64,000 nt of DNA, from contig NC_135250.1 of NCBI RefSeq assembly GCF_964204865.1, positions 6,758,001 to 6,822,000 on the forward strand, given 5' to 3'. A program made the translations under genes and the position numbers. Shown one piece after another: positions 324 to 63,599 of the stretch; positions within the stretch are counted from its first letter, which is position 1; each line of letters opens with the position of its first letter. The notes under the pieces are model-generated. The model searched no databases, had not been told where the DNA came from, and was given only the letters and a program-made list of their open reading frames with translations. The stretch is from Styela clava (taxonomy: Eukaryota).

Positions 324-527
324 CTTTAGTTGTTCAATATTAATGTCCTTGAATGCATGTGGATCCTGCCATCCTACATTGATTGGAAACTTTGATCGTA
401 GACTTACTGCACCATGCAGTAAACATATGTTGTGTAAACAAGGAAGATATTCAGGCCGAGTGGAAGTGGTGAAGATGTCTGCATCGACAACGGTGGAGAA
501 AAATCGAAGCAGATTGTCTTTCATTCC
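324..527 (-). CDS. DHC exon 89 (AAA6 lid); gene continues past window start
   Basis: GMKDNLLRFF...LHNICLLHGAVSLRSKFP..GW. Confidence 0.93.
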
Positions 528-6500: not shown

Positions 6501-9500
6501 CCTGATCCCTTACCATCATTTTGAAAGGAGTGTTTCCTTTTAGGAAAGCTGATCTACATCTGAACAGCTGATGAAATCTATCATCACGAGCGAGTGCTTC
6601 AACATCACAGTATGTGACAAGAAGAATTTGTCCCTCACTCAAACTTGTTTCAAATTGAGAACGTAGATCCTGCATGAAAGATATAACGAGAACACAGAAA
6701 AAATGTTAGGATATTAATGTGTAAGAACATATATAAAAAATGAAGAAGAAAAAATACAGCCCCCCCCCCCTTTTATATAATATCCTACCAGGGCATAAAA
6801 ATTGTGTAGCGCATGATAGAATCGAAGATTCTAGGCTACGTGACTCATGGTCTTATGCAAAGAAAAAATGGAAGGCTTCATGAAAATACCATGAGAAATA
6901 ATTCAGACTACTGTAAAAAATTTGTCAATATTGAGATCTGAATATTTATAATGTGATGGTGTGTTAATATTTTATGACATGTAAACATCAAATAAAAATC
7001 ATTTTCTAGTAAACGTTTGAAATCTTTCTCAAGGAGATTTCTGTAAAAATAAACACTTACCCGGTACAAAACTTGTACAAGATGTGGCGTCGGTTCTTCT
7101 GGGACATCATCATGATTTTCTTTGCTCATATCTGGTGAGAAATATCCATTTATCCAATCAACAATTTTGGTTGTTGGGTCGCAAATCAAACACCATGTCA
7201 TATTGCTTTCCATCGCAGCCAGAACACAAGCATTTTCAAGTGATTGGTTATCTGTTGGTAGTTTCTTCATTCTAATTGACTGAACTTCTGTAGGCTCAAA
7301 AATGAATTCCTGCAATCTGGAAAATTAAAGGTAATGCATAAAGAGTAATGTAATGTTAAAGCCAATCGTTGATGAGGAAGTTTCAAATGCTGTTCTGAGG
7401 GACACTCATATGCAGAAGGATTGTCGAACAAATTGCCTCTTACATTGAATAGAATTGGTAGTCAATAAGCAGTTGTCCAATATATGTTTATTATCTTCCT
7501 ATGATATGGTACCTCCCTATGACTGGCTTGTATAAGGCCCTGTTGTGTGTGAATCCTTATATATCATAAATTACCAGCATAAATCAGCGTATTACCTGTA
7601 ATTGGTGAATAGCATCTTGTGTGGCAACGGAAGTTCGTAATGTTTGCAAACATGGGTATAGAACGACACCATACGTCTTCTTGCGTCGATTGTCATTCCT
7701 CCGCAATATGTTTGAAATGCTGCGGCAAGAATGCAGTTTGTCAAAACTTGTTCAACTGTAACGCTTTCATCCAATTCATTCTTCCATGCATTTTCAAGAG
7801 GCTTGAGACTGAAAAATAGGGTAGATTTTTACAAATAGGTAAGATTTACATATTTTCTTTTTTTGAATATTTTTCATACAATGGTGTAGGTTCCAGCACC
7901 TACTGACTGTCAACAGAAAAAATTGGGAAAAAATACAAAAAATTTAATAGATGATGACATAAGGACTAATGTTATCATTGCGAACAAGAAAGATGGAAGG
8001 CGTCATCATCAATTAGGTCATCTCAGAACTGGCTCAGATCCATATCGTAAAAAATGGTTGTAGTATTTCTTCTCTCTGTGAATCTTTTCTTGGTAACAAT
8101 AATTTGAGTAAACAAATCAATTCTAATGTGATATTATGATATAAATGTTTGACTAGAATTGAGAAATCAGGATGAAAAGGACGAAATTTTTGTAATGGCT
8201 ACCTTTCTAATGTTGCTAGTGCAGATCTCAGTCTTTCTTTCGATGTTCGAAGTTCAGTTCTCAAATGGTGTTTTCTTACAACCGCATTGTCATATCTGAA
8301 AAAAGCAAAATTTTATAGATTATTAAAAAATTTGGCAAATTATTATTTCAATTGCCTAGAAATGTAATTAAATTTTTTCACGATTATTTATCTGATCAAA
8401 TTGGATTTTCAATAGGTTTGCTCGGAGTAAAGTTCAGAGCCTTCAACAAAAACGGTAATAGGTACTGATGGAAGAGTTGGAATAACCACTAATGCACCAC
8501 ACACTAAATATAGGTCAAAAGAAATTGGTTTGAACAAAATTTAAAATTGAAGCTTGAAACTAAAATCTATTTTATTTTTATATCATTTTATTCATTTATT
8601 TGCATAATATTGTCAAATTGTATAGAATAGAATAAAATTTCATGTGCAATATGTCACTATATTTAAAATCAGAATATATTACAGGACAAAATTCTGGAAT
8701 ACCAACTATTCTGTCATGTACAACAACCTTCTTTAGTTTGCGGACCGGTAGAATTTCAAAACTAATTTTACGGACAGGTGCACCTTTAAAATCAACTCAA
8801 GATGTCAGAAAGACAAACATGTCTAAACGAAAGTAACTGCAACAAAAGTATGCAATTCAAAAGAAGACAAATCAATTTAATGATAAGTTTGCTTCTGTCT
8901 TTTTGATATCATACATGTCAAACATGGTTCTATTGAATTCCGTGGAGCAGCGGTTGGGAACCACTGATGTACGACACTATCTAATACTTGGAGCACTTTT
9001 TTGAGTGTAGATAGAGCCACATGATAACATAAATGGTGAAGAATATCTTACTTTTCTTGTAAATCGTTGACTAAATCTGCTATTTTTTCCACGTCATCCT
9101 TTGTCAGTCCATCAATGTTAGTTTCCTTAAAAACACTGGCTGCGTCACTTACTGTATCAGATTCAGTATCATTGTCTTGGTCACTTTTTGTTTGCGGCTA
9201 TTTAAACAAAGAAGAAAGTCAAGCCAACTTTAGTCTTTCCAACAAGTAAAAAAGTCAGTTTTACACAAAATATGAAGAAAAAGGATAATCACACATTTTA
9301 ACTGGGGAAGGCGATGCGCGAGGAACCAAATATGGTTATCGAGCAGCAACACCCAATAATAAAGATTCGATAGGGAATGTCATTGAGATAGTTGGCTCAA
9401 CAGACAATATAGACTCAATCTCCTAAACAAAACAAAAACTTTGGTGCATTAAAACCTTCGTTAACAACACTTAGTAAAATTGATATTTAACTCAGCTCCG

Positions 9501-12500
9501 ACCCCGGAGGATAAATGCTAATTCCAGACTCTGATGAGGGTCTTTGAATTGTTATTACAATTTGAAAAAATCGCTCAGTAAAATTAATGTTTTTTGAGAT
9601 TAAGTCATTGTAAGTTATTGAGTAAGTTTTAGCTTCTTTTATCATCATTGAAACTCTGCATTTCCGACAAATTCAAATTTTGAAAATATGGTTTTGACCC
9701 CTGAAGATACATGCTAATTTCAGACTCGAGTTATGACCTTTGAACTGTTATTACAACTTGAAATCTAAATAAGATCTCATTGTCCATTTTAATAGGTAAA
9801 AAAACGTTAACATTTTAAATTTTTACCTTTTGATCATCAATTTCAGATCGTTTTAATTGTTCCAGTTCAGCTTCCAAACCGTTCACTTTATCAGTTGCTG
9901 ATTTGAGCGGTCCACATAATCTTAATATAATATAGGTAGTTAAGTAATTGAAATAAAAATTGGCTGATTTGGAATTTAAATCGGATAGACGGTTGGCGCA
10001 TTGTACTAAGTGTTAGGAATACTCTTGACATCACACATCTGATTACAATGCCAGAATCCAAAAGATAATTGCGTGTGATATTATTGCTGCGCTCATCGCC
10101 AGCCGCCACTAGGTGGATCATGCTACCGCTGGTCAGTTTTGGCTTCCTCTACTACATTAGTTCATGCATCTGAAACAATAAACTGATTAAATATCCCCAT
10201 ATCTGACATGGATTCCCAATTAAATAATAGGCAGTTTGCAACATGATTAAACCGTTATATTGGCTTTTCTCTTCCAAAGATAAATATGTCAATCCTATCA
10301 TATACACTTGAATAAATGTCTTATATTTGACATACATTGTATATTCAACAATACTGATAACAAACTCAACCAGGACTGCCGCGTCTTCGCTACTATATCT
10401 TGCTGATGATATTGTTATTCCAGTCACTAATAAGGAAATAAGATAACAAAGATAGAATTAGAACAATTTAATAATTATATTCCAATAATTAAATGAAAGA
10501 GAAATAAATACTTGACATTTTTTTTCCAATTTTATCTAAAATTTAATTTAATCAGTAGATAGTTTTTAAGCCAATATGGACAATAAATGATGGATATATG
10601 ATTTGACACTTTTTCTTATGATGTTTCCACGTCTTTGTTCCCACTAATATACAAGAAGCTACAGTTTTGAGGATGAACATTTTTTTCGGTTCGGCCTTGT
10701 TTACTAAATTTATTACATTCTGGGTGAGGGAGGGACAGGGTATGTAAACCAATGATATTTAATGCCAACATAGTAAAAAGTCTAACGCTTTACCCACTAG
10801 AAACTTACTGTTAGGTTTCCTTTGTTGTCCCTGAACGGAAGTTGTATGTTCAAGCAATGACCCTTCACCTGTGACCCCTTCTTGACCCTCCTTGCCTTTC
10901 TTCAAATAAGACTCAACTTCAGTAAGAAGAGATGGTTCAAGTCCAGTTTCCCAGTTCACCCTGCATGATAACAGACAATATTTGATCCCCAATTTTCGGG
11001 ATACATTTTTTATTTTATACCATTTAAATGTGTGATTAAAAATTTATTTGAAAATATATTTGTTGATACTTACGCATGGATCATTTCAACAAATCTGACG
11101 GTATCATTCATAAAATTTTGCATGCTCTTCCATTTATTTCTATCAGCTGCTGATAAACCTTCTGATTTTGCATTCGATGCCGCTGCATAGAATAAGTATG
11201 TAATTAACAATTCCCAAATTTATAATATATTGTATATATGTAAAAATTCACTTTTACTAAATGTCATAGGATAGATAGATAATGATTTATATCCGAATAT
11301 TAAGTACACATTGCATAAAAAAACAATGATCATAAAATATAAACGAAAGGGGACGAGCAAGGTCAACGGGGTAGACTGACCCATGAGTTTACATTTATGT
11401 CAAAGGAAAACAAAGCATATAAGACCGTATTATCTTATGGCTCGAAGGTTAGCACATCATGCATCGAGCCATCGCACCCTTCGCAGGTTTGAATCGAGTT
11501 GGTGATGGGATAATTAGATGCAATTGGTTTTCTGGTCAGTTACGGCTTCCTGGGAAGGTAACAGGACATGAGGCCATGGTTCACCAGATGATTAAGTCGT
11601 CTTATTGGCTTTTTTCCCCCAGGATATATATGAAAATTCTATCTTTGTTCTTTTACCAAATGTGCTCTGCCTTCTTCCTTTTGCTTTCACTTTCCTTGTT
11701 GTTCGCAGAGTACTGCCCGATGAAACTCTTGATTCCACTGGTTCAGTGGTGTGTTCTCTGCGTCCGTTTTTAGGTGTCTTTGTTTCTGAACCCCGAGTAC
11801 CCATTTGTGATTGCTGATCGGGTCTCGTACTTAAATAAGGATTTGCACCCACAAGAACCATAACCATTTCAAGAACCTAAGAAAAAATAGAAAAATTTGG
11901 GGTATATATAAAATGAAGACAAAGTAAATAAAATTTGTGTAATTATATTTTGAAGATTTCAGAAGTGTTTCGTTTCTTTTATTCTTCTGTGAGTTGATAA
12001 CCTATTATTGAAGTATTCCTTGAATTTATCTAAATTATGCGACTGAAATTAGAAAAAAAAAACATTTAAAATAAGCACAAATTATTAGGTATTTGTTTGC
12101 TATGAAACTTAAATAAATCACAAAACATTAGCTCCATTAAAAATTGCAATTGAAAAACAATACTATTTTGCTTTAATATACTTACAGCATACACTTCCAA
12201 TACATGTAATACAGAGCAATTGCTCTTGTTTACAATGTTGTTGTTGTTTTTATAAAAAATTGGTCTCATTTGCAACTAATGATATAATCAAAGCAGGATT
12301 ATGATAACAACATAACAGTTAATTCTGTCTGTTAACCAATCATACCTGTGCAACAAGTACAGGTGGATTCTGAAATTTTTTGAGTCGTTCAATGCATCCT
12401 CTGTCTACTTTATTTCTCCACATTTCAACTTGAGCTTTAGCAGATGTCAAATTCGAAGTTGCTTCATCCAATTCTTTCCTAAAATTTGTTAAATAGCTAT

Positions 12501-15500
12501 GTTTCATTCCGGAAAGTGGGTGCCAATAATATCAGATTCATGAAGTCTATATACAAAGTTCTTCTGCTTTTCAGAGTTATGGTTCCCACCTAAGCAAAAC
12601 TAATTTACAGTATAGGTATATGTTCAAAAAATTAGGAGTAAATAATGATTTTGGTCAAATATTTGAAAATTTAATAAAATGATCTAAGTTTTATTAACTG
12701 ATCTTTTGATTTATCAGACTTTTGTTTAATCCTTTTGTCCAATCCCCTTACCTAGCTTCCACCAAGTCCTCGTCGATTTGCATTCTTTTTGATTTGAGAT
12801 TGGCTTCCATCATTTGTTCAAACAATTCATCATATTCATCTCTTTCTTCATGCAGTAGTAAAGTGTCATCATCAAACTCATCCTCGTCATCTTGTTGTAG
12901 TTGCTAAAATTTGAAATGTGTTAGAATGTTTTGCTTTTTGTGAGCGACAATATTGAGGAAATATTAGTATTGTATATGTTATCACTGCCAGGGCTATAGA
13001 GATAGTTTACTTTATGCCTACTACCTTGTTCTCGGTAGGCAGTTTTTTTTCTAAAAAAATAAGAACTCTCAAAATATCAGCGGCTGCTTCTACAGTGCCT
13101 TTTTCGGAGTGAAAATCATAAAAAAGGGTTGTATAAAATATATTAATATGAATCTATATCCCAGTTCACAACAAACTATCACTGGATCACTGAATTTTTT
13201 ATATTTTCAACTTATAAATGGGGATATTGAAAGTATATTCATAACAACTGTAAAAACACAATAAACATATTGTTTTCTCAACTTTCTGCAATGATTCAGG
13301 AACATTTTAGATCAGTTTTGACATATTTACGAGTTGAACAATTGAATATTCATGTATATTTTTTCTATACTGTATCCAGAAAATAATTTGTCTAATTATG
13401 AACATGCATGCTATAAAAGAATGTCGGCCTTGAAAAAAAAATTTTTTGTTGTGGTGATGATCTTACCTGTAAAAATGCAATCAAAGGTCCGTTTCCGATT
13501 CCGAGATGAGCTTTCAATTTTTCAAGTCTTGTAGCTTCAATAGTTAATTTTGTGAAAAGTTCTTTCACTTTGATTTGTGCAGAGGAGAATTGATTTTTCA
13601 ATACCTGAACACAAATATATCAATTTTTTTGTCTGTTTTTCAGTGTGATCTAATGAATGTTATCATAATCTAGCAAATTCTGATGGCTGGTGATCAGCAT
13701 AAATTCCATTTAAATGTCAGAGAGAGAGTAATAGATAAAGCTACATAAGCATAAATATTAGTGTTGTGTTTGGTTTTGAGGTGCCTGTATTAACATTCAA
13801 GATTGAAGTTTTGTAATTGTGAAAATTTTAGATAAGGTTAAAAAATTTTCAGAAAGGAAAAATGACAAGTAAAAGCAAAGAAATACTTGTCATCAATGAA
13901 AAGAAACAAAAATTTAATATGATAGCAAAAACAATATTCACCCCAATTGCTTTTTGCATTAGTCTTGCATCTTTGCGAGTTTCATCCAAAGTATCAAGTG
14001 CATGTTGTAATCGACCTGTCTCTCGTCTCAACTTTTCACTCGCGGCATTGTAAAGTGTGTGTAAACAATGCATAAATTTCCGATAAGTGTAAGGACCAAT
14101 GTAAATCTCATTCGCTGCACTGTTTTTGAAATCCCTTTGAAGTTAAAAGTACAATAATAAGGTTGGGGTGACCAAAATATTACTCAACATGAGTCACATT
14201 TTACAGTAACGCAACTTGAGTATGTTTTAAATAATTTTGAAACCAGCTTTTCGCATGAACTTTGACCTGAGGGCTTGGAATGACTTGATTTAACTTGAAT
14301 CAAGTTGCAAATAGAGAACTCCCAGTGAAACAGTGTTCGAATTGGCGTATTTGATGAAAATATCTAGAATCATCCTTATCCGACTTGGTGAATTGGCTTC
14401 ATTAATAAGTAAGTCCAATAGATTAGAATTCGGAATATGTTTAACGAATCAAAATCATGATTAATTACAGTTTTTAATCCCAGAAAACTTCTTTTTTAAA
14501 TTTTTATAACGTCTCTATTCACCTATGCAGTAAGTTAATCCTTTCCAGTAATATAGTTTTTGAGTAAGGTAGATTTGGTAGATCATATTTCTCAACTTTT
14601 ATTGTTTCCTTGTCTTTCTTCGTCTGCAAACTTGTACCAGTAACAGAAACTGTGGGATTGGTATCACCGCTCCATAATGTTTGTTTACAGTCACGAAGAG
14701 TCAAACTGAAATAAGAGAAGTTTTATGAAAGTTAGGTATGACATGATAAAATGTGTAACAAGTTATAATCCAGTGGTTCTTTAACTTTTATTATTCCTTT
14801 CAAAGACTCTTTTGCTCTTGGAAAAAATACCTAGATTTCCTTCAACGATTCTCCACCAGTTATTTTGTTCAACACAATAAAAAAGCGAACAGAAGAAAAT
14901 GAAAGAATAAATGCAATAATCCGCAAATAGCAGTTAATTCAATCCAGTCATTGTGAATGGCTCTTGCTCAGTGCGTCCAGAGAATGACTTCGCGGCCCCT
15001 TAGAAGGGTCAATGGTCGGTCCACTTTGAGAAACCCTGTCATACTGCCCTGTTGTTTATGGGCAGTAAGTTTTTGGAAGACTATAAATATTGAATTTTTT
15101 TATCATTCACAAGAAACTACATTGATTGTTTTTAAAATAGAAATATGATCCATACCTGTGAATGTTTGCAATTGCCATTGTAAGATATTCTCTAGTCTTT
15201 GAACTTGCTTCTTTTGCCACATTTTCATTGTTGATGAAGAATTCAGCTTGTTGAATCAATACTTCCTGAGGCCAATCTCGAATCCAGATAATCTATTTCA
15301 AATTTCAAAAATTTATTGAAAAATCAACTGGCATACAATGATTATTCGATCAGTGGCAAGCAATTTACCGTTATACTCTCGCTAGGATGTCCAACTTAAA
15401 ATTTTAATTTCAGAAATTTGTCATTATTTTGAATTTCGAGTAATCTAAAAAGCCATTTTTTGCCACAAAATACCATTCGATTTCTGAAACAAAATTAAAA

Positions 15501-18500
15501 GCATTTTATTGCAAAAATGACAAATTCAGAATGCCGGAATAAAAAAAATTGTCAAAAAATTATGAATATCCTTTCATATTTAAATTTTGTTATAACATTA
15601 GCCCCCAGTTAATTTTTTGCCTTTGAAAATTATATTTTTTGAATAAAAAAATAAAACATATGTAAAACAAACTTCGAATGATTATTTTTAATTTGTAATT
15701 AAATAATTGGTAATTGAATAAAATTAATTATATTCTTGATCTTTGTTACTAACCTGTGTTTCGGAGACAATTCCTGGATAAGCTTGTGATGCATCTCTCA
15801 ATAGTTTGTGATTAGGTGGAAGATTGAGTACAATATGAAGATTACATTTGACTCGGGAAACAAAAAATTTCATCGGATCTGACATCATATTTGGATGGCT
15901 TCGTCTTAAGATTGGTGCAAGAACCTGAATTACATAATTAGACTTGACTATATTGGCTTCGCAGGTTACACATCATAGGTTCAAATCTGATGTCTACTGT
16001 TCCTCCCAAAAATATTAGCTCTTCACAAATCGTTAGAGACCAGTGTTTTTTTCGGAGGGTAAGACGTAAGGTAAAGAGCATGTATAAAAAAACTCGAATA
16101 ATAGGACAAAATATTAGGATGTCAGCGTTTTATGAAAAATTTGAGATAATGAAAAAAAGTTCTATAAATGACTTAAATATTCAGATAAATTTGTTGAAGA
16201 ATGATCTAAAGAACAATGAGTAAATTCATGTCATGATATAGAACAAAGAGGTTTGGGTACTCCCGTAGTGTGTGTACCAGGTTAGGGTTAGGCCATAATT
16301 TTATTCTGATTTTCCTTATTTTAGTTCTATTACGAGTTCGGGGACTGTCTGTGTTAGCCAAGTGAATAAACCCCCTGCCCATAGGTTTCATTCCCTTTAC
16401 ACAACTTGATGTAGAGTAGGCGAACAAAATTAGTTCCTCCAGATTGGACACATACTTCTGGAGCGCCAAATTTAGACTTCAAAAAGTTGAATAAGTTTTA
16501 TTTAAAAACTTGATAAACAATAATGAAAGAGAATAAAAATAGATTATATTTCTGTCACAGAAAAAATTACAGTATTGCTTTGTAGACTAACAGCACTTGC
16601 CAAAGCACACAATGAAGATTTATTTTTCAGGGAAAGATTTGCTTAATGATATTTTAAATAAAAGATTTCATCATGCATTATATTTAATCACATCAAACCG
16701 ATTTGGCTTATTGTTTCAAAAAATATACTGTAATATTGTTATACTTAAACGCTGGCATGATGGAATTATTATCAAGCTTTGCATGAGTCTTTCATAGGTA
16801 GAGAACTACAGAAATTGTCGAAGGTAGAAGCATCCCAATTCTACATAGTTCATCTAATTTACTACTCTAGGTGAGGTTGTGAAAGTGATCACCTTGAACA
16901 ATGAACCAATCAGGGCTCAAGCACAAGATCTTAGGACTATTATCTGCCTATTAAAATGCCAAAATAAAAAAGTTTGCATATAAAGTGATAACCATTGAAA
17001 CAGAATCTGAAAGAGTAAAATGGGTCAAATACTAGATGCTAAAATGTTCATATCTCGAGTAAGGCTAGAAATGATGTCTTTAATCAGATCACAATTGCTT
17101 ACAGGATAGTTATCAACCAATTTCCACTTGTAATAAATAACCTTGAAATATCAATTTCAAAAATTTTGTTTATATATATTCATACCTTGACATACAATTG
17201 ACTGATCATAAATAATTTTGATTGAAAGCTAAATCTATTTTAAAATGTTAGTATAGCTAATAAATCAGTTTTTCAAATTAGATATAGATGATCAATTTGA
17301 GTGATTTTGAATGAAAACAAATATATTGCAAAGAATCAATAAATTTTGCTACTGATCATAACTTTTTCAAAAATAATCAAGCCAGGTGTATGTAGGTTGT
17401 ATAATTAACATAAATCTTCTAATATATATTGATTAGTTTTCTTTATATGAATTTTCTTGTTATGATGGTATTAATTGCAAGATGCAAAATTTGAGGTTCT
17501 TGCCTCCTATGTATTGTTAATTACTTGATGACCAATAAATAAAGTAGAACAATATGAAGAATATGAACGTTGAACATGCATTTGCAATTTACACTGCTGA
17601 ACAGCTGTGTAGTGTGTAAGTTTGAATCCTGAATATTTATGTTTGATACTACACCACATATTAATGCAAAGCTTTAATGTTTGATAAATAATAATGTGAA
17701 TATGGTACATAATTTTGAATCAATGTTTTAAACTAACTCTCTAACTCTCTCCTTCTAACTTTTATAAAAATTTATCAAAAATATGACAAAGTACACAATA
17801 GTCGAATCAAACTGCTCTCATCTTTTTGATAAATGTTAATACATTGAAAAATTCATTATAATTATTTCTTTCGCTGATAAATACAACATATATCTCGAAA
17901 ATACAATGACGACCGTGGTAAATATTGCAAAATATAGCATATTTGTATTCTATAGGTCAAGGGTGAGCAATTACTTTTCTGAGTGGGCCAGTTACAGATA
18001 ATAGACTTGGTTACTGGGCTGGAGACTCAAAACTCAATATGAAAAACTATCAATAAGAACAACAGCTAGGCTAACATTTTTATAATAATAAAAAGCACAA
18101 TGTAACAATCGAGGTCATTATGACATTTTTTTCATCTATATTTCCATCAGACATCAATATCAATAAAAACTATAGTCATAATTTTAGCAGACACAAGTGG
18201 GCCAGATGAAACATTTCGATGAGATCCGGCCCACGGGCCCTATTTTGCCCACCCTTGCTATATCTTATAGATTCGCCAGCATTTGTTCATATCACTATTA
18301 ATAAATGCTAGCTTTATGCCTGCGTCAAGTCAAGTTAGTTATGTTATAAAATAATTGCATATAGCTTAAGCAGTACCTATATCAAAAAAGCATTTGTTTC
18401 AGCTGTTATGCAATTCGAAAAATCATGGTTTTAGCATTTGATTTTGCATTACAAATAATAGTTTTCTGTTAAAAAGCATCATTACATTGGTATTGTTACC

Positions 18501-21500
18501 TGATCTGGATCGTTGCGATATTGTTCCAATATATACTAAAAATGGCGAATGACATCAAAAACTTGTAAATTAGGAAATGCTGTTTGAGTGAAAGTTAAAG
18601 TTTAGGCAAATTATAGCCACAATCTTTTCTAGTTTTTTAAAAAATGTCTGAAAAGATCATCAAAAACCAGACTAAAAAGATGTGAGTAAAAAATGAGATA
18701 TTGCATAGATTACTTAATTTTGAAAATTGTCTCCGTATAAATAGTCAACCCATACAGTCATAACGCTATTGTCTGTATGGTATAGAATACTGCTTAAATG
18801 CTAATGAAAAATTTTATCAAATATAAGAATGTCAATTGTTGATATTGTGATCATATGACACCTTATTTCATATAAATCACTTGGATTGTAATATAAGGGC
18901 TTAACAGTTGACTCACTTAGATAAGAATTATAAATCATATATTTATTGTCGTCACTCATGACTTTCTCACCTAAGTTGAGCTAGTTAATGAATCTCACTC
19001 TCTAACCAGTGCCAATGGGTCGTGATATATTTATTATTTTTTATTTTACGTGGCCTTACTAGGTCTAGGTCCCTTTTCACACAGGATGAACATAGAAATT
19101 TTCCTAATCTGAATGAGACGACATGGTTAAAAACTCTCAAATATTCTTGAATGAAAAACTGAAAGTATAATGTTGTTGGTATGATATGAAACAGAAAACA
19201 TCAAAGAAATACCTCGAGTGTAAACTGCTGGTAATGTACCTACCTGGAGTAGACCTTCAATTTCATCATTAGAAAATAGATGTGGATATTCACCAGCTAT
19301 GAGAAGACTGTTTATGGCATCAAGAAACGAAGGATCGTATAAATCTCTGGAAAATAAAATGAAGCATATGTTACATAAAGTCATATAAATTATTAATTCA
19401 ACGCTGAAATGGGGCAAATCAAACAGAATTGTATAAACTACTGTATAGATTTCATGGTCTCAATTTTTTACAGTAAAAACCCTCTTCAGTAGACTGCCAG
19501 TACACAAGAACCAATGTTATTTATAAATTAAAGTTCTTTTTGGATATTGTTTTTTTTTAATTTCGTAATTAAACTTTCATAGAGAAGACATTCGGAGACT
19601 GCAGCGCTGCAAGATGATTTGAAAATGCAACAGGGTTTAGAGGTCGATCAAAAAGTCGAACATTGCTCACCATTGCACATATCATGTTCACATAACCCAA
19701 TAGTAATGGTTTAGTGACCCTTTGAAATAACCAGAAAGGCTTCTTGAAAAAAAAAACAGAAACATTTTCTGAAATTGACAAGACGTACAGTGCGTGAATA
19801 AGGATTGCAAGCAAATAAAACAGTATACCTTGCTGTCAGTACCACAACCACAGGTACACCTTCTGTTCCTGCTATTCTAACAGCAGTTCTAAGACTGTCG
19901 AAAAACGTAGCAGGTCTTGATGCATCCACTTTAAAAGGTTGCAATCCAGCGACATGTAGGGCAAGTTTCGTTAGATTCGATAAATGTGATCCGACAGCAC
20001 CAACCACAGTCATACTTCCACTGAAAATTGAGTGAATAACAAAAAAAAAGATTTTTATTTGGTATCTTATAGCATAGCAATTCCTGCATAAGCAATTATC
20101 ACTTTCATAAAATATTTTATTTTTTGTTTTTCCCAGTTTAAAGTGTATGTAGTTATGTCAATTGCTTGCTTGTATCATAGTTTGACAATATTTAACTCTT
20201 TGAACCCTGAAAGCCGCTAAACCGGCTTTCCCGAGAAAGTCTTCTGACGCTGAAAGCCGGTTTAGCGGCTTTCGCATCCCGTAAGAGGTATGCAACTTTG
20301 AAACCTCATATCTCGCGAACCATTCATTATATTTAGACAAGTTTTACATCGTGTGAGAGATAACCTACAGGACTAAGTATAATTTCAAAATTGAGATAAA
20401 ATATTGTGATCATCTTATGAAAATTGGCAAAATTAAAAAGCATAAAAAACTTCTAAAAATTGCTCAAATCTAATTGACAAAACTTAAATTTGTTTACGAT
20501 TAAACCTAGTACATTATCGACAAAATTTGTAGAATTTGAAGATAGCTTTCCAGTGATACCATTAGATTGAACTTATGTTGCACCATTCAAATTTTAGAAG
20601 CATTTTTATTCGTGATTTTGTTTGTCGCAAGATCGAGGCGACGTCAAGGTGACGTAAATAACAACCTAACACATTTACGCCGTTACGCAGCGACGTTAAG
20701 CAATTACGTTGGCACGTAGCACGTTTACGTTTCATACGAGAAACACTTTTCCTCGCATGCTCGTAACGTCATTTACTTAAGTTCGTACTCGTGAAGCGAC
20801 TTACGACTTGTAAACGATACACGGGGAAATTTACGCATTACATCGGTTCGACTAAAACACACAATACGCAGTGTTATTGCCGTTTTAATTGCATAAAGAT
20901 ATGAAAAATAAGAATAGCCAAAATAAGGATTTTTAAAAACAGAATGATGGAACATATCGATGGATGCATTGTTTAGCGCCATTGCTGAGTTTTATTGTGC
21001 AATATTTTCTTTTTCCGATATATGAATACTATCCAATATTCCATCTGGACAAAGCTTTCGTTTAAAATCCATTGTAAATATAGCGATATCAGGAATGTAG
21101 CGTATATGCAGTAATTTCGAAAATCTAATGAGGCTGCAAAATGTAAAACACTGACCAGGTGAGCTACTGGTGCCACCATGTCTTCCGTGTACCCGTTATT
21201 ATTTTTTTTTTTATTCAATCTTCATGATATCCAACGGTGAATAATTAGCCTTGATGTTTCCGGCGGAACCTCATAAATTCATGAGGATCAAATATTTCGT
21301 TTTGGCCATTCATTTTCGTCCCATATCCAAATAGTAAACGTATATAAAATGGCCTTTATATTCTAGCAATTTTACTATGTTCGATCAAAATTCGTCTGAA
21401 AGGGTTTTATCTGCGGCCGAGGATATGATACTAATGCAATGAAGCCACAATCTGCACTCAAGCTGTGAACGACCAGATGTGCAATTGCGCAATATACCTC

Positions 21501-24500: not shown

Positions 24501-27500
24501 AATAAACCCTCTGAAGCATAAAAATTATGAAATCTTTAAAACCCACCTCCAAACCTTCAACAGTTCTCCATTCAAATGGTTTATTCAGTTTACATATAGT
24601 TTGATCATCAACAAGAGAACGAAGCAATTCATTACATCTTTGTACGCCATCTATATCACATGACGGTAGATTCAAGTCATCAATGAAAGCCTGAATAGTA
24701 AAATATTGTTATCGATACAATTTCACCAACATAACTAGAAATAAACAGTTTCACGTCCCTATTCAGTAGTATGTATGTTTTTAAAGAAGTAAGACCTCAA
24801 ATGCTATATCTCGAATTAACAAAGTAGGAATAGCTGGGCCAATCCAGAAATCACATTGCCATATGTATCCGGGCATGGGATACATAAAACTTGATAATCC
24901 ATGCCAAAACAGTGAGATCAAGTTATTTTCACATACTACATAAAAGCTTGTAGAAATTCTACAAGGAAAACGGGATACTAAAATGTCTACGCATAGACAA
25001 TCATTCTATGTAACTCTCACTTGGGTATGGAAATTAAAAATTATGAACATTAATAGTTATAATACCTCTAGAAATTTCCCATCTCGTGCCCCATAAACAA
25101 ATCCTTGTCTATGTTGAATATTATGTTGCATGAAACTATGAAGTTGAGAAGCAGTTGAAGCTCGACTGAACACTAGACGTCGCAGAATACTGAATTGTTT
25201 GTCTGATAAAATTATAAAAATTATGTTATGTGGGGAAAGGTAACAATTTGAGGGCGGAGAAGTGTATCATACAGCCTGTGAAACCTAAATAGGTGGCCTA
25301 TAACAGAACGCATATTCCATTGTTTTCAAATACTTTTTCTTATTTATGCTGATACTATCAGCATTTTTGACTCTGTATAACGCCACATTAAGATGAAATT
25401 TTGTTTGGAGAGACTTCAAAAGCATACTGTCATTAAAATTTAAATTACTGCCTCTTGAAAAAAAGGATGTTAAATATATAAGAGGGAGGTTCGAATTAGG
25501 ACAAGTTCAACCTAATCAAGATTAGCTAATTATTCTTTATATAGTGAAAAAGCAGTTCAATGATTTGGTCCTCAGCTCCACTTCAATTTTACGTCTCACC
25601 CATTGCACGTTGTTCAGGGGATTGTATGCCGTCAAAAAAAAAGCGCCGGTAGAAGCAACCTTGGTCCTACCTTGAGTATCCAAAAAATCATTGACTAAAG
25701 CTGTTTTCCCGATTCCTGATTCGCCCACCACTAGAGTGTGCTTTCGAGCCATATGTGCAAAGTCAAGTAAACAACGAGTACGAATCGTATCGACAGTATC
25801 AACAAACACCTGAATATAACAAGAATGATATTTAAAAAACTCCATGTCCAAACTTTTACATGAATGCATGAAAATGTCTAAGCAGAGATGTTCATATCTG
25901 AAAAAGCTCGTAATGTTTTATTTATTGATATATATTATAGATTTTTATAAACATGAATATGAATGAAATGGTTTTCCATTGAGCTACATGAAATAGTAAA
26001 ACCAGTCAAGGTTGGTTATCAGAGCAGAAAATTTTAGGATGTTAAGCTTTTTCAGTTTTCATCATTTATTGTCAATTAACAGAGAATATTAGAATTTGCT
26101 GCTGTTATAGAGATAGTCGAAAGTTAAGCATGTGTTTGAGGACCAATCCACAAAAAAACTTTAAAACCGGTCCATAGTGTGAAAAGAGTATTGAATCCCT
26201 GTTTTAAAGGACATAAATATATGTCTCAATAATTATCTTCCTCACCTCTCCAAGCATGTCGGTTGTCCCTGTATAAGTAGCTTCAGGAACCCTAGCCATC
26301 CAAGTATCCCATTCACCTGATTCATCAACATAATAATCAAATACTGAAATATCATGGTCGTAATCTGGCAACCTAGAAAAAAGAAATATGAATATTTACT
26401 TATATATCACACATCCAGCAACCAAGCTGAACTGCTATATAATTTAGTTGCCTACATGTGCATTCCTCTATCTCAAGTTGAATATAACAATATATTCCTA
26501 CATTTGAAAAAACTTACGCAGATGACAATGTTCGAAGAAGATCACTGAATGTTTTAACAGTGTTTCCTTCCAGAAGTCCACCAAATGCCCAGACAAGACA
26601 AAACAAGTACAATCTCTCAATGTGAAGATCACCACCTGGAATTTTGAAAAAATTGTTCTTGTAGTATTTGTACTTCACGCCCAATAAATACAAGTATAAA
26701 TTCATAAAAACCAAGAAATCTCCAAGATATCTTACCAATATGTTGCTGATGCTCATTCAGCATTTCACCCAGCAATGTAAGACATGTTGTCAACAATCCA
26801 ACTTCACATACTGGAAGTTTTATCCTGGCAAAAATAAAAATAAAACAAATAGGAAACACAACAAAACCAAAATGATAATATTTATAAAAGAATTATTCTA
26901 ATTCAAGCAAGACCTTTGTATAGGCATTGTCATTGTATAACAAAATTCACAATAAAATCTACCTTTTATCATGGAAAACAAAGTTACAGACACTGTCTAA
27001 AGTTTTGTCGAATGCTTTTTCTAGAACACGTTTTTCATCAGCGTTTCTTTGTTCGAGCCAAGCTTTTGCAAGAGGACGCCAACCAAGAACGTTTTTATCC
27101 AGATAGACCAATCCCTGTAAAAATAAAAGTACAGTTGGATATGATGAGTATTAAAACACAAGGTTTACAATTACCATGTATTACAATAGTGTTATGATGC
27201 TATTATTTTATCTATTCCTCCTCAAAAAGAGTACTAAAATTCAGTCATTAGTCCTAGTCACTCACCGTACGAGACAGCAATGACGGAGACGCATTCCTCA
27301 AATCAGTTGTCTCAAATACAACTCTCATATTATCCGTGAGATAGAGTCGATCTCCATTACTCAGTTGCATGACTTTCTGATCAGATAATGCACCGTTGAG
27401 ACGATCAGCCCAAGAAGATACTAACGGACCATCAAGACAGAGCCACGTTGTACTTTGATTCTGCATAGAATAAATACATATGAATCATTAATAGGATGGA

Positions 27501-30500
27501 AATTTTGATAAATAAAATAAAACTAAAAATTTTCTTATTTCAAATATGAATATCCACAGTTAATCCTTGAGCAAAATCATAATACAAGAAACCTCTTATA
27601 TGTTGACCTGAAATGTTGAATTGAATTATTTGATAATTTATTTATATGAATTATTTTGAACTCTGCCCAACACACAAGGCAAACACACAGAAGGAAAAAA
27701 CTCCAAATGAGGAAATGGATATCTCACAGGTTCGACTGCTGTTAGAAATATGTGCGCAAAGATTTTTGACCATCCTTGCACTAGACTTGATGGTGGAGAG
27801 ACATAACCGAACAGCGGTTACTTGAACCACCTTATGACACAGAGGAGTTGGGAAATCCTCTCGGACATAATTATCCCTGCGGGATTCAAACCTGCCAACA
27901 GTCAATCAGAACGTGCAATGGCAAGCGTATTCCTAACCACTGATTCAGAAGATATAGCCATGAAATTCCATATTTATTATTTACTTACCCTGTTAGCTTT
28001 TCTCCAAGCATAAGTTAAAATACCATCTGACCATTCACGAGAGTTATTGGTTTGTCCGAACATCAAAGAAAGGTCATCGACAGTCAATGGGTGAAGTTTT
28101 TGCAACTTATGGTTCGACATGCCGGGGCTGATTGTTCTCCCAGCCCCAGGATTGTGGGGTAATTTACACAAAGCATCGATAAGTACAGAAAGCATGACTG
28201 ACTTCCCGCAACCTGCTGGTCCAGCTAAAACAACACCTTGTCTGGCTTCCGCTGTTTGGTATAACTGAGCAGCTTTAGATAACCAGTTTTGTCCAGGAAT
28301 GAGTCCCCTTTCATTTGCAACCTAGTGGTAAATGATATAAATATTTTTTTTTAAATTAGCAAATTTCACAATCATATTTATTCTGTGGGAGAGGAAAGTT
28401 TTTCTAACAGCATTTATTTTATTCATTTCAAATATTAAATCAAACATTATCTGATAGCATTTCTGTGGCAAGAATAAGCAAGCACAAATAAAGCCCTAGG
28501 CACATTGAAGGTCATTTCTAACTCTTCAGTACTGTTTTCCATTTTTGTTGAGGAATTGAGACCTCGATTTGAGTAAATGTGTAAAAATTTATTCTAGATA
28601 TAAATCAAGTTTGGGCATAGGAATAAATTGGGGCAATTATCTTCAATAATCGGGCACTTCTTACTATGAATTTCATGTCATATATTTTCATGACATAATT
28701 TTATATCTATTCAGCTTATATATGAAAATAATATCCAATCCTATTTGTCTATTATACATTGCTCAGAGCATTGTACCTCCGCTTTTGCCCTAGAAAGCTC
28801 ATTCATAAAAGCAAAAGCTATAGATGCCATACACAATATTGGGCACTCCGGTAATTTTTTTACCAAGATGACGAACAACCTGAACAACCCTAACATGGTA
28901 CACATACTATGTTCAGGTTGTGCGCCATCTTGGTATGAATACTTCGGGAGCATCCAATATTGTATGATGCTCTTCTGCAGGATCCAAATGCAAAAGTTTT
29001 ATATAGAATTAGAAATAAGTGCCTATTTATTGCCTTGTTCTGGGCGAAAGTATGAAGAAAAAAGAAAAAAAGTTGAACTGACATGTGTTAAAACTGGTTC
29101 CAAAATCTGTTCTTTTTTGCGAGAGCTTGCAGGACCAAAAGACAATTGTGTTTGAATCGGAGTTATTGAGTGACTTCCGGTAGCGGACATTGCACCAAGC
29201 AATTCTTTCACCATCGGAATTCCACTGAAAGTGTCTTTCAAGATAAAGTGAAAAACCACTGTATCAGATGGAGATAATCCTGGTGATATGGTCTCAATGA
29301 TAGCCTGAAATAAGAAAACAAAAAATGAACAATCAACAATACCAAACTGAATACTTTTAAAATAATAGTTTAATAGGATTTGAATTTAAAAATTCTATGA
29401 ATTCATGTTACATAAATTTACTTTTTGACAAAAATCATGATGATATTTATGTGCCAAGGCTGTAACACTGAATTTAATGATTTGTAAAAATAGAATATTT
29501 GAAAAAATTATAAATTTTCACAGAAACCCATTTGTATTCAAATAATATTTTTGAATTTTACAATACAATCTAAATTGATTCTGATGTTGACTGCCCTAAC
29601 TGGATATATATTTTGGGACAAAATTTTTATTTCAGATAATTTTCAAATATAAAAACAAATATGACAAGATAACTGAGAAAATGAAACTTCTATAAAAAAT
29701 GAAACATTAATTTAGATAAGCTGCATTCGTGAAAAGTGCTCCTTTATTGCATATTGCGTTTGTTGTCAATTTTAGCCTGAACTGAATTCTTTGGGCATCA
29801 TGATATAGAAATGAACAGTCTATGTTGACTAGTTGTTTTGATGAGAACCCCTATATTTCTGTTATAATCTGTTAGTTAAAATCTAGTCGAAAAAGTGTAA
29901 ATATTTCCAAATTCTACATCTTAATAAAAAGTTTACCTGAGCAACAAGTCCGTGGTCAATTTTAGCCTGGCCTGTTAATGTATTCGGCATATTAGTCTTT
30001 TTTCCAATCAATTTATCAGAAACAGCTGCTTGAGGTCGGCTCGGCACAGCTACTACAGGTGACGGTGGTTGTCTAGAAGTGTTCAAATAGGTTGTTGTTG
30101 TATGTTAGTACGTATTATAAATCAAATTCTCAAAAACATACTAAAAAAAATGATTACTGTGTGAAAAACTGGAGCTTTTTATTAAAAAGAATTTTTTCAA
30201 AGCCTACTCATTTAAAAGTAAAGGAGACTCTTTTTTGAGCAAGGTTACAGGCAATCACTGAAGTGCCGAGAGCTGAAGAAACTATATAGATTTATGGTGG
30301 TGCATTATCATGTCAGCATATATTACTTGACTTGAGATATATTACTTGATACACTTGAAGAAATTCACAAGAAAAACAGCTAAGAGGGAGTGACACAAAT
30401 GAAGTTCTGGAAAAAAAATGTGCTCCTGTACATAGTCTGTGGGTATGAATCCTGTGAATTATTGATATTCTCCTGTCAACAAGATATTGTTCACCTAACT

Positions 30501-33500
30501 ACTATAAGCTGTCGTCTGCTCTTTCACACATTTTTATTAGAATATGAAATGTTTACTTGCTTAGATATTCACATCCAACTTGAAGTAGCAAAATGACACA
30601 ATGTCGCAATTGAGCATAAATTATACCCATCTTATAAACTTTCCTCTCATGGGAATAAGTACAATTCCTTATTCAAATACCTGACAGAAGTTTGACTGTT
30701 TGATCTTGACAATTTCTGTTGATCAATTTCAGTTCTTGAGCCTGTTACTGTATCAGATCGAGATATAGCTTCAGAACGTTCATCCTTTGAATAAAATAAA
30801 AAGTTGAATTAGATTTGAGATCAACTGAATACTTCTGTGGTATATTCACTTGTCTAACACAGATAGTCCCTGAACTCGTAATACAACTAAAATAAAAAAA
30901 AATCAGAAAAAAATTATGGCCTAACCCTAACCTGGTACACACACTACGGGAGTACCATCAGCTTGGGATTGCTTCTGCATATTGTGGCACGGTCTTTGAA
31001 TAGGATAACAAATTTTCTCCAATCTTATAATATTTGTGTGTGAGCTACGTTCGGTACCCTTGTTACGCATTCATAATCAGTGTCACAGAGCGTCGAGCCA
31101 TTGACTCGACTCGAGTTGGACTTGAGTCAACGTTTATCAAACACTCAAAGTTATGTGAGTTAACTGGTAACATTTCTCATACCCAACATGGACAGGTGAC
31201 CTGATGAGGACCCACAGAGTACTATATGTTTGAGATGTTTTATCGTTTTCTCTCTCATAACATAAAAATAAACAAAACGCCTATTCAGAATGTTAGTATT
31301 CAGCTTAATTCAATGATAAATATGATTTAATCACATACCCTAGCTTTACGTTTCTGTGCTGCCAATGTCAAGGCAGAAAGCAATGACTGCAATGAGACTT
31401 CATGATGTTGAGATGAAGATCTAGGCAATTGTTGGTGTGACAATTCAACAAGTGTTTTCAGTCTATCTGCAAGAGCTTTAGGCGATCGTAGACCGAGTGC
31501 AGTACATTTTGCTTTCAATATTGCGCTCATATCTGGTTTGATAATAGACACTGTCCGATAAAGAGACCTAAGAATGAGTGAATAAAATGTAGAATGGTGT
31601 GTGTAATGGGCTGGTAAGCTTTCCTCAAACAGATACAAAGTCCTGTCCAGGTGGCGTCTTTTACAGGAAAAAAATTTAACTTTGTATTTGTGTAAGGCAA
31701 CATTTCCAGCAACCCAGCCAGTAATCATTATTATATTTTCTCACCATCATGAAAATACGCTTTGCACAAACAATGAAAAAAAACATAAAAATGACACTTC
31801 AAGGTGAACGGGGGGACGCAAAAATCCAATACTGGTTAACAAGCAGCAAATTTTTATCATCTTGGGGGGGAAATGGGCTTTATATTTGCTGTAAATAGCA
31901 ATACTCAATGTATGAGTACTTTCAATGCATAGTGAGGAAGAAATAGAGAGTTCTGAAATAAGCAAATGCAGGAATTTAATGAAAAAGGTTAGGAACCACT
32001 AGTGTAAGGTAATACCTATACCGTATTCTTATTGAATTATAAACTGTCCGAACTGTACAAAAGCGTAAAGTGCGAGTCGCTCAACACTGGCTAATGTAGT
32101 GACTCATTAAAAACGAACCCCTATTTTCCCAAGGTGCCAATTGGGAGGGCAATGAGAAAATTGAAGGTTCCCAGTCCTCTGAAAATTACCTGATCGCAGT
32201 TGGTAATGGTTTAAAATGTGGAGCTGATGGATTGTATGTGATGAACATAGCTGATCCTGGATTAACTAGATTGACTTGAGCATCATTGTCACCATAATTA
32301 CTTGAATCTTGTCTCTGTAAAATACAAAAATTTATTTAATAATTGAATTATACTCATAAGATGATGGATGGGTACAAGCTTGATACAGATGTTCATTTTG
32401 GTTCATCAATCAACACAAAATGGATACATGAATAAAGCAACTTGAGGGAATACTAATAAAGCTAATATAAGAGTCAGATTAAGGCTTTTAAGGATATTAA
32501 TATAATCCATTTAAATAAAATGTGGTCCAATTTTTAAAATTCTGTTAATTTGATCAGGCATAATCATATTCTTCTTATTGGTAATTAAATTATCACAAAT
32601 ATCTACAACAAACCTTGAAATCAATGATCTTCTGCATTGATGAAAAGATCTTGTAACTGAATTCTAAGATGACAGAAATACCACTAGGTGACAGTAGATG
32701 CACATCGTCAAGGCAACCCCAGCATCCATCAGCAGCTAGGCCCTGTGATAACAATTTTGTATATTTGTAGTTGGGATGTATCAGTGGTGATAGCGTTATA
32801 CCTAATTGTGGGGATTTGCAGCGTCACCCTAACTGGTTTAAATTCTATACTAATTGCCCCCACCCAGGTTGAATTTTAGGGAGCATTCCATATACGACAT
32901 TTTCAATGTGTGGAACTTTCTGAGAGATGTTTTTTATTACTGGGAATTTTGTAGGTTAAATTAAACTTTGAACTTCTGAATACGAACCTGTAGTATTTTT
33001 CCCAGTGATGTAGCATCAGTAGATCGTGTACAATTGATCATGAAAATATATTTTCCAAACAAACTTGCAAGACCCATAACAGTTTCTGTTTTTCCACTAC
33101 TGGCATTGCCCACCACTGCAGAACCCTGAGAGGAAAAAAAAAGAAAATTGATCAATTAGGATAAGAAGAGGAAGAATTAAATTGAATAGAGCATGATTGG
33201 TAGAGGGAGTCGCAACAAATCAGTCTGGTAAAAGAACCACTTTGTGATGAGCCCATGAGAACCTTATCAAATAATTAGTAGCATCAATAGTTCTGCACAA
33301 CCAAAGCCTTATTCAGAGTGATAAAGTGAAGCACAATATTAAAATACATACTTGACATTGAGCGAGTGCAATTGACATGCTGACGAAAGCTCTTTCTGTC
33401 GCAGGAGCAATCACTAGATTTGCAGATGACGATAAGCCGTAGAATTCGAGTCCGTAATGAAACTGGTTATCGAGTATATGAAGGTTATGTTCTTGGAATC

Positions 33501-63599: not shown

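What the first reader, a model, noticed from the sequence alone, without database searches (positions are those of the whole stretch)
324..63599. Intact but apparently de-motorised outer-arm-type dynein heavy chain (candidate pseudo-motor)
Seen: 89 exons splice into ~4,630 stop-free codons with every dynein module in order, so the gene does not look decayed. Yet AAA1 catalytic residues and the AAA4 P-loop are altered, and the stalk and MTBD carry large insertions (see separate findings). Known: AAA1 hydrolysis and stalk helix sliding drive the dynein cycle. Inference: this is a gamma-HC-derived paralogue kept as a structural tether, brake or regulatory scaffold rather than a force producer. 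Divergent heavy chains such as vertebrate DNHD1 are known, so novelty depends on orthology.
Basis: partly seen in the sequence, partly recalled or inferred. Interest (0 to 1): 0.85.

Follow-up and report, generated by a model that had tools for sequence, protein, structure and literature searches.

The report
Sea-squirt copy of non-motile dynein DNAHX

Summary
On the minus strand, window 324-63599 carries 90 GT-AG exons (4,640 codons). They are part of a 106-exon, 5,416-codon gene. Its spliced translation equals RefSeq XP_077973667.1, the uncharacterized Styela clava protein LOC120348568. The first 285 and last 491 residues lie outside the window.

In trees the protein sits with SH-aLRT 100 in one clade with XP_041462850, the type sequence of DNAHX (Chai et al., bioRxiv 2025). 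That clade is separate from DNAH5/8.

It shows every sequence hallmark of DNAHX:
- length above 5,000 residues;
- a roughly 55-residue insert in the AAA4 small domain, which folds as a beta-hairpin plus helix;
- insertions in both stalk helices and in two loops of the microtubule-binding domain;
- a degenerate AAA1 site.

These traits are shared across the family, not special to this gene. The family probably equals Kollmar's class 12 of 2016.

Small additions from this work:
- all chordate copies have lost the AAA1 Walker-B glutamate;
- the AAA4 P-loop lysine is lost in the whole family;
- AAA1 is the least conserved module here but the most conserved in DNAH5/8;
- an ichthyosporean sister lineage lacks the insertions.

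The related notes from this scan lie on this same window only.

The parts
324..63599 (-). 90 coding exons (residues 286-4925 of 5,416) of Styela clava LOC120348568, the DNAHX orthologue. The gene continues beyond both window ends.
   Evidence: exact match to P0103 / XP_077973667.1, with all junctions GT-AG or GC-AG.
33087..33110 (-). AAA1 Walker A. It departs from the canonical GPAGTGKT but keeps the G-K-T core, so nucleotide binding is plausible.
32695..32715 (-). AAA1 Walker B with Asp-Asp in place of Asp-Glu. The following Asn-Arg of canonical DEFNR is also replaced.
   Evidence: Asp at this position occurs in 7 of 7 tunicate and 37 of 37 scorable vertebrate DNAHX rows.
32228..32245 (-). 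AAA1 sensor I loop. The Asn is kept. The canonical Gly-Tyr-Ala-Gly-Arg that follows is lost.
31381..31404 (-). AAA1 sensor II position, Arg replaced by Gln.
   Evidence: The Arg is present in 29 of 29 canonical rows and absent in nearly all DNAHX rows.
28199..28222 (-). AAA2 Walker A, intact.
27266..27289 (-). AAA2 arginine finger motif facing the AAA1 site. The Arg is retained.
25702..25725 (-). AAA3 Walker A, a full GxxGxGKT. It is closer to consensus than the DNAH5 motif.
19978..20001 (-). AAA4 P-loop position with the Gly-Lys lost, so no Walker A lysine remains.
   Evidence: Lost in every DNAHX row; present in 29 of 29 canonical rows.
18500..18535 (-). 36-nt cassette exon used only in isoform X1 (XP_077973666.1). 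It adds 12 residues inside AAA4.
14119..14683 (-). Pre-sensor-II insert (PS2i) of the AAA4 small domain, residues 3582-3640, on two exons with an intron between. This is the DNAHX hallmark.
   Evidence: about 55 extra residues at the same place as in the sea-urchin type sequence, absent from DNAH5/8; conserved motif across the family; the exon 14522-14707 folds as beta-hairpin plus helix.
12769..13490 (-). Acidic insert in stalk helix CC1, residues 3738-3790 (18 Asp+Glu of 53), with exons and introns between.
11085..11831 (-). Basic, Ser/Thr-rich loop before helix 3 of the MTBD, within residues 3856-3946 (the last ~16 are conserved helix-3 sequence).
10374..10908 (-). Second MTBD insert, in the helix-5 region, residues 3968-4018.
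9096..9856 (-). Acidic insert in stalk helix CC2, residues 4053-4096.

Best explanation
The window holds the central 86% of the Styela clava orthologue of DNAHX. DNAHX is an old animal family of dynein heavy chains that split from the outer-arm gamma / OAD-alpha (DNAH5/8) lineage.

Shown here:
- the gene is intact and places in the DNAHX clade;
- it has all the sequence hallmarks of DNAHX;
- constraint is selectively relaxed on AAA1, while linker, AAA2 and AAA4 stay well conserved.

Inferred from the sea-urchin cryo-EM work:
- the protein still binds ATP at AAA1 (Walker A lysine, sensor I Asn and the AAA2 arginine finger are kept);
- it does not turn ATP over, because the Walker-B Glu and the sensor II Arg are gone;
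- the AAA4 insert holds the C-terminal cap, so the ring stays in the pre-powerstroke shape;
- the interrupted stalk and the loop-laden MTBD no longer give regulated microtubule binding.

The tail is outer-arm-like. Through it the protein would pair with a second, working heavy chain and hold it in an inhibited two-headed particle, probably during flagellar assembly in sperm.
For: - Identity of the gene.
- The type sequence is in the same clade: P0089 = XP_041462850; DNAHX 25 rows, one branch, SH-aLRT 100; DNAH5/8 separate, 100; tunicates sister to vertebrates, 97.
- Length 5,416 residues, and every region longer than in DNAH5.
- PS2i at the same site with a conserved motif. It folds as hairpin plus helix, with pLDDT about 87 in the hairpin.
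- Stalk and MTBD inserts at the sites named in PMC11785096.
- No Pfam MT match: 155 bits in Ciona DNAH8, none in the Styela protein at E<=1e-5; none in this window at E<=0.01 in the genome-wide scan.
- Motif census over about 100 DNAHX and 29 canonical rows.
- AAA1 is the least conserved module within DNAHX (53% Styela-Clavelina against 58-75% elsewhere). It is the most conserved in DNAH5/8 (80-84% against 31-73% elsewhere).
- The insert-bearing region 3300-4300 keeps 61-62% identity between tunicate orders and 40-44% with molluscs and echinoderms.
- Cryo-EM of the orthologue (ATP held in AAA1, only the pre-powerstroke state seen, heterodimer and phi particle): PMC11785096.
Against: - No functional or expression datum exists for the Styela protein.
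- Asp in place of the Walker-B Glu need not abolish hydrolysis. Walker A Lys, sensor I Asn and the arginine finger are all in place, so a slow ATPase is not excluded.
- The stalk and MTBD flanks are conserved across phyla. That argues for some retained function there, not mere wreckage.
- The functional model rests on one preprint on one species.
- The contact between PS2i and the C-terminal cap could not be tested here, because complex prediction was unreachable.
Confidence: 0.8

Rival explanations
1. It is a working motor with altered kinetics. AAA1 still hydrolyses ATP slowly, and the long stalk with its extra loops gives a different step or a different track, so the protein tunes the sperm or ciliary beat.
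For: Walker A Lys, sensor I Asn and the AAA2 arginine finger are kept in Styela. AAA2 and AAA3 P-loops are intact. MTBD helices 1-2, 3-4 and 6 are 73-76% identical between tunicate orders. Kollmar 2016 expected such classes to give 'different axonemal bending characteristics'.
Against: The Walker-B Glu and the sensor II Arg are both gone. AAA1 is the least constrained module. The PS2i lock is present. The sea-urchin orthologue, which still has the Walker-B Glu, already shows no post-powerstroke state and holds unhydrolysed ATP.
Confidence: 0.12
2. It is the tunicate orthologue of vertebrate DNHD1 (Kollmar class 11), the other known divergent heavy chain.
For: Both are long, divergent heavy chains with a defective AAA1 Walker B. 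The preprint calls DNHD1 a possible 'structural ortholog'.
Against: The gene sits in the DNAHX clade next to DNAH5/8. DNAHX is reported absent from mammals, which do have DNHD1, and the two are reported to lack specific sequence similarity. No protein named DNHD1 was among the 120 best relatives listed. The same genome has a second, far more divergent heavy-chain locus on contig 9 that could be the DNHD1-like gene. No DNHD1 sequence was available here for a direct tree.
Confidence: 0.02
3. It is a decaying duplicate of DNAH5/8, on its way to being a pseudogene.
For: Catalytic motifs are altered, and Pfam scores are two to three times lower than for Ciona DNAH8.
Against: A 16,251-nt reading frame runs over 106 exons without a stop or a broken splice site. 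Orthologues occur in placozoans, cnidarians, molluscs, annelids, nemerteans, echinoderms, hemichordates, all three chordate subphyla and acoels. Styela and Clavelina are 66% identical over 4,483 columns.
Confidence: 0.01

Closest known systems
DNAHX subfamily (Chai, Suchenski Loustaunau, Zheng, Yang, Zhang; bioRxiv 2025, PMC11785096; type XP_041462850 of Lytechinus variegatus)
   Same: Same clade as the type sequence. Length above 5,000 residues. PS2i insert in the AAA4 small domain. Inserts in CC1, CC2, before MTBD helix 3 and in helix 5. Non-canonical AAA1 Walker A, sensor I loop and sensor II. Found in an animal that sheds sperm into water.
   Different: Styela and all other chordate copies have lost the Walker-B Glu, which the sea-urchin protein keeps. 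The Styela Walker A also differs from the echinoderm one. Tunicates are not mentioned in the preprint's text. The family-wide loss of the AAA4 P-loop lysine, the intact AAA2 and AAA3 P-loops, and the inverted conservation of AAA1 are not discussed there.
Class-12 dyneins, DHC12 (Kollmar 2016, Mol Biol Evol, PMC5100056)
   Same: The tail resembles the outer-arm class 3 (DNAH5/8, Chlamydomonas gamma). The stalk is 'extremely unusual', without a typical microtubule-binding site. Origin is placed in the holozoan ancestor. That fits the ichthyosporean sister pair found here.
   Different: The equation DNAHX = class 12 is my inference from the descriptions. No class-12 sequence was at hand to test it, and the preprint does not make the link. 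Kollmar proposed class 13 as its partner heavy chain, which is untested.
Outer-arm gamma / OAD-alpha heavy chains (DNAH5, DNAH8, Chlamydomonas gamma)
   Same: Nearest canonical class by score and by tree. Same order of modules. DHC_N1 and the DNAH2/5/8 coiled-coil in the tail.
   Different: It forms a separate clade. It shares 25-34% identity per module with Ciona DNAH8. Canonical AAA1 and AAA4 motifs are lost. It has about 800 extra residues and no Pfam MT match.
DNHD1 (class 11, the human 'orphan' heavy chain)
   Same: A divergent heavy chain with a defective AAA1 Walker B, thought to be non-motile and needed for flagellar assembly.
   Different: It is a different lineage with insertions at other sites. 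It is present in mammals, where DNAHX is absent.

Membership tests
DNAHX | Groups with the type sequence XP_041462850 and apart from DNAH5/8 in a heavy-chain tree | tested here: met
   P0089 is XP_041462850.1. The DNAHX clade of 25 rows, including the window's protein, has SH-aLRT 100, and the DNAH5/8 clade has 100. The result repeats with more protist outgroups. These are quick LG+G4 trees of 4,300-4,500 columns. Only OAD-alpha-type sequences served as non-members.
DNAHX | Unusual length, above 5,000 residues against about 4,500 | tested here: met
   5,416 residues (isoform X2) and 5,428 (X1). Every region is longer than in DNAH5.
DNAHX | Pre-sensor-II insert in the AAA4 small domain: beta-hairpin followed by alpha-helix | tested here: met
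   About 55 extra residues at residues 3582-3640, aligned with the sea-urchin insert and absent from canonical rows. The motif is conserved family-wide. An AlphaFold2 model of exon 14522-14707 with 27 family rows gave strands 19-30 and 33-44 and helix 48-61. Mean pLDDT was 70.7, about 87 in the hairpin. This is a fragment model, so its position in the domain is not shown.
DNAHX | Insertions in stalk CC1 and CC2, and in the MTBD before helix 3 and in helix 5 | tested here: met
   All four are seen in the alignment with canonical rows. Stalk plus MTBD is 522 against 350 residues. There is no Pfam MT match.
DNAHX | AAA1 Walker A, sensor I loop and sensor II depart from the canonical dynein motifs | tested here: met
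   In addition, the Walker-B Glu is Asp in Styela.
DNAHX | Locked in the pre-powerstroke state with ATP held at AAA1; non-motile | not testable with these tools
   Known only from cryo-EM of the sea-urchin protein.
DNAHX | PS2i contacts the C-terminal cap | not tested
   Complex prediction on residues 3530-3700 against 5090-5416 was sent four times and the machine was unreachable each time.
DNAHX | Forms a heterodimer (dynein-X) with a second heavy chain; present in sperm flagella | not tested
   The partner is unknown even in sea urchin.
Kollmar class 12 (DHC12) | Tail like outer-arm class 3; stalk without a typical microtubule-binding site; holozoan origin | tested here: inconclusive
   The descriptions fit: DHC_N1 and DYH2-5-8_CC are in the tail of the orthologue P0016, there is no MT match, and there is an ichthyosporean sister pair. 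No class-12 sequence was available for comparison.
Canonical OAD-alpha (DNAH5/DNAH8) | Canonical AAA1 motifs (Walker A, DEFNR, sensor II Arg), AAA4 Walker A lysine, Pfam MT stalk | tested here: not met
DNHD1 (class 11) | Orthology to vertebrate DNHD1 | not tested
   No DNHD1 sequence could be fetched. It is argued against indirectly by the DNAHX placement and by PMC11785096.

The most novel reading that the evidence does not exclude
DNAHX is Kollmar's class 12 and is older than animals. The lineage would have lost its motor in steps. An insertion-free form survives in ichthyosporeans (Chromosphaera perkinsii Nk52_evm2s805 and a metagenome relative). That form already has a defective AAA1 Walker B and a degraded AAA4 P-loop. 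The PS2i lock and the stalk and MTBD insertions were then added on the animal stem. The Walker-B glutamate was lost on the chordate stem and, independently, in a few other lines. The unidentified second head of dynein-X would then be the class-13 heavy chain that Kollmar paired with class 12.
Probability: 0.4. Interest if true: 0.45.

Novelty: new member of a known kind. Interest (0 to 1): 0.3.

Why it matters
For this locus the result is mainly an annotation. RefSeq's 'uncharacterized protein LOC120348568', earlier called 'dynein heavy chain 8, axonemal-like', can be named DNAHX.

Beyond that, it gives a chordate model with tractable sperm and embryos in which to test the non-motile dynein idea. 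It also shows that chordate copies are a step further from a working ATPase than the sea-urchin protein studied so far.

The contrast in AAA1 conservation is a simple sequence signature of a heavy chain that has stopped using its main ATP site. AAA1 is the best conserved module in DNAH5/8 and the worst in DNAHX.

The link to Kollmar's class 12 and class 13, if right, names a candidate for the unknown partner of dynein-X.

Tried and rejected
- Exon query: the AAA1 exon alone found only weak matches in solved structures. It was a poor query for the representative search, giving 47 hits, mostly fragments. That search still yielded the first full-length orthologues.
The joining was done only inside scripts, to prove identity with the database protein P0103. 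P0103 or single exons by reference were then used for searches.
- Pfam: the scan refuses P0103 for length. The older partial model P0169 and the orthologue P0016 were scanned instead.
- Other features in the window: Rfam, tRNA and other-strand ORF scans found nothing.
- Contig 9 locus: the ESM Atlas look-up of its AAA1 exon said only 'dynein AAA1'.
- Literature: Kollmar's supplementary tables are not held.
- Rejected readings: pseudogene, DNHD1 orthologue, and canonical DNAH5/8 with annotation errors.

Full report
**What is in the window**

The window is G000 contig 1, 6,758,001-6,822,000, of a 377-Mb genome. Long open frames on the minus strand hit dynein Pfam families in descending order along the window, from DHC_N1 near 54 kb to the AAA6 P-loop domain near 1 kb. 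The scores are weak for a dynein.

A search with the AAA1 exon brought in full-length relatives. These match the window exon by exon. A wider search found P0103, Styela clava LOC120348568 isoform X2, 5,416 residues. It lies on a contig of exactly the length of the window's contig, 32,746,820 bases.

Exact matching of P0103 to the window plus 10 kb on either side gave 106 exons. All 105 junctions resolved uniquely as GT-AG, with one GC-AG. The joined frame of 16,251 nt translates to P0103 without a single difference.

Ninety exons, 13,921 nt and 4,640 codons lie at window 63599-324. Residues 1-285 and 4926-5416 are outside the window. Isoform X1 adds a 36-nt cassette exon at about 18500-18535.

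The joining was done only inside scripts. Searches used the database protein or single exons by reference.

**What family it is**

Relatives of 5,100-5,650 residues occur in placozoans, cnidarians, acoels, molluscs, an annelid, nemerteans, echinoderms, hemichordates, amphioxus, three tunicates, non-teleost fishes, coelacanth and amphibians. True DNAH5/8 proteins score far lower. None of these relatives carries the Pfam MT domain in the precomputed lists. All canonical hits do.

One relative, P0089, is XP_041462850.1 of Lytechinus variegatus. [quoted passage not shown]

In a tree of 36 heavy chains over 4,492 columns, the Styela protein falls in a DNAHX clade of 25 rows (SH-aLRT 100). DNAH5/8 form their own clade (100). 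Inside DNAHX the gene tree follows the species tree: tunicates next to vertebrates (97), then ambulacrarians, lophotrochozoans, cnidarians and Trichoplax. A second tree with more outgroups agrees.

The nearest solved structures to the Styela motor are human DNAH5, DNAH8 and Chlamydomonas gamma. So 'gamma-derived' is right.

**The hallmarks, one by one**

- Length: met.
- AAA4 small-domain insert: about 55 residues at 3582-3640, at the same alignment position as in the sea urchin, with a motif conserved across the family and nothing there in canonical chains. Folded with 27 family rows, the exon that encodes most of it gives a beta-hairpin (pLDDT about 87) followed by a helix. The preprint describes this same arrangement.
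- Stalk and MTBD: the alignment shows an acidic insert in CC1, an acidic insert in CC2, a basic Ser/Thr-rich loop before helix 3 (residues ~3856-3930), and a second insert in the helix-5 region. The conserved CC1 proline of canonical chains is replaced. In the same genome the MT profile hits at least ten other dynein loci but nothing in this window.

**The ATP sites**

In Styela:
- AAA1 keeps the Walker A Gly-Lys-Thr, the sensor I Asn and the arginine finger supplied by AAA2.
- AAA1 has Asp for the Walker-B Glu and Gln for the sensor II Arg.
- AAA2 and AAA3 P-loops are intact.
- The AAA4 P-loop has no lysine.

A census over about 100 DNAHX and 29 canonical rows shows the following:
- The sensor II Arg and the AAA4 lysine are lost in essentially the whole family.
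- The Walker-B Glu is kept in echinoderms (11 of 11), hemichordates, most molluscs, nemerteans and most cnidarians.
- The Walker-B Glu is Asp in all tunicates (7 rows, 3 species) and all scorable vertebrates (37 rows), and Asn in amphioxus.
- The preprint's text does not treat AAA4L, AAA2 or AAA3.

A further signal comes from conservation per module. In DNAH5/8, AAA1 is the best conserved module (80-84% between Ciona and a mammal or a fly). In DNAHX it is the worst (53% between Styela and Clavelina, against 73-75% for linker and AAA2). Constraint has been lifted from the main catalytic site and kept elsewhere. A decaying gene would not show that pattern. It fits a protein that still needs its ring, linker and tail.

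**How it most likely works**

By homology with the sea-urchin protein, the ring holds ATP at AAA1 without turning it over. The AAA4 insert pins the C-terminal cap, and the ring stays pre-powerstroke. The outer-arm-like tail lets it pair with another heavy chain in an inhibited phi particle, proposed to help deliver dyneins into growing sperm flagella.

For Styela this is inference. Nothing here measures activity, partners or expression. A slow, altered motor is not excluded.

**Older literature**

Kollmar (2016) defined metazoan or holozoan classes 11 (DNHD1), 12 and 13. [quoted passage not shown] He suggested that classes 12 and 13 form a heterodimer. I infer that DNAHX is class 12. The preprint does not say so, and I could not test it.

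**Side finding that fits this**

A metagenome protein (P0136) and Chromosphaera perkinsii Nk52_evm2s805 (P0175; identifier scheme checked in PMC6981761) form the sister group of all animal DNAHX (SH-aLRT 100). An AU test rejects placing them with the holozoan canonical copies (p = 0.0005). Two long branches meet there, so caution is due.

The metagenome member, P0136, has normal length, an MT domain, no PS2i and a sensor II Arg, but already a defective Walker B and a degraded AAA4 P-loop; for P0175 only its length and MT domain were checked. This speaks against the preprint's 'absent in protists'.

**Verdict**

The kind is already described, so this is a new member of a known family with a few incremental observations.

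Noticed in passing
P0136 and P0175 (off-window; database proteins): An ichthyosporean heavy chain (Chromosphaera perkinsii Nk52_evm2s805) and a metagenome relative are sister to all animal DNAHX. They lack the insertions and keep a Pfam MT domain; the metagenome member also lacks the PS2i. This suggests the lineage predates animals, contrary to the DNAHX preprint and in line with Kollmar's class 12.
   Followed up: partly
G000 contig 9, about 9,499,700-9,547,100, minus strand (L004 and L006-L010): A second, much more divergent dynein heavy chain gene in the same genome. Its AAA1 Walker B reads Asp-Gln, the classic hydrolysis-dead form. It is a candidate DNHD1 (class 11) or class 13 gene and could not be named with the tools left.
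   Followed up: partly
G000 contig 13, several places between 148 kb and 462 kb; contig 4 at 14.04 Mb: Repeated weak matches to the middle of the dynein AAA1 profile. They may be fragments or a tandem family of divergent copies.
   Followed up: no
G000 contig 5, 15,088,394-15,093,109: A dynein heavy chain lying in one uninterrupted open frame of 4,311 residues. It is the only intron-free one among the dynein loci of this genome.
   Followed up: no
window 50597-51308 and 62311-63184: Two intronic minisatellites: a 29-bp unit in 24.5 copies at 95% match, and a 31-bp unit in 28 copies with a 154-bp higher-order period. They account for the local skew in base composition.
   Followed up: no
window 18500-18535: A 36-nt cassette exon distinguishes RefSeq isoform X1 from X2. 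It adds 12 residues inside AAA4.
   Followed up: yes
P0172 (Phallusia mammillata) and P0096 (Clavelina lepadiformis): DNAHX orthologues exist in three ascidian orders. No Ciona DNAHX appeared among the listed hits, only canonical Ciona DNAH8. This may be a loss or an annotation gap.
   Followed up: no
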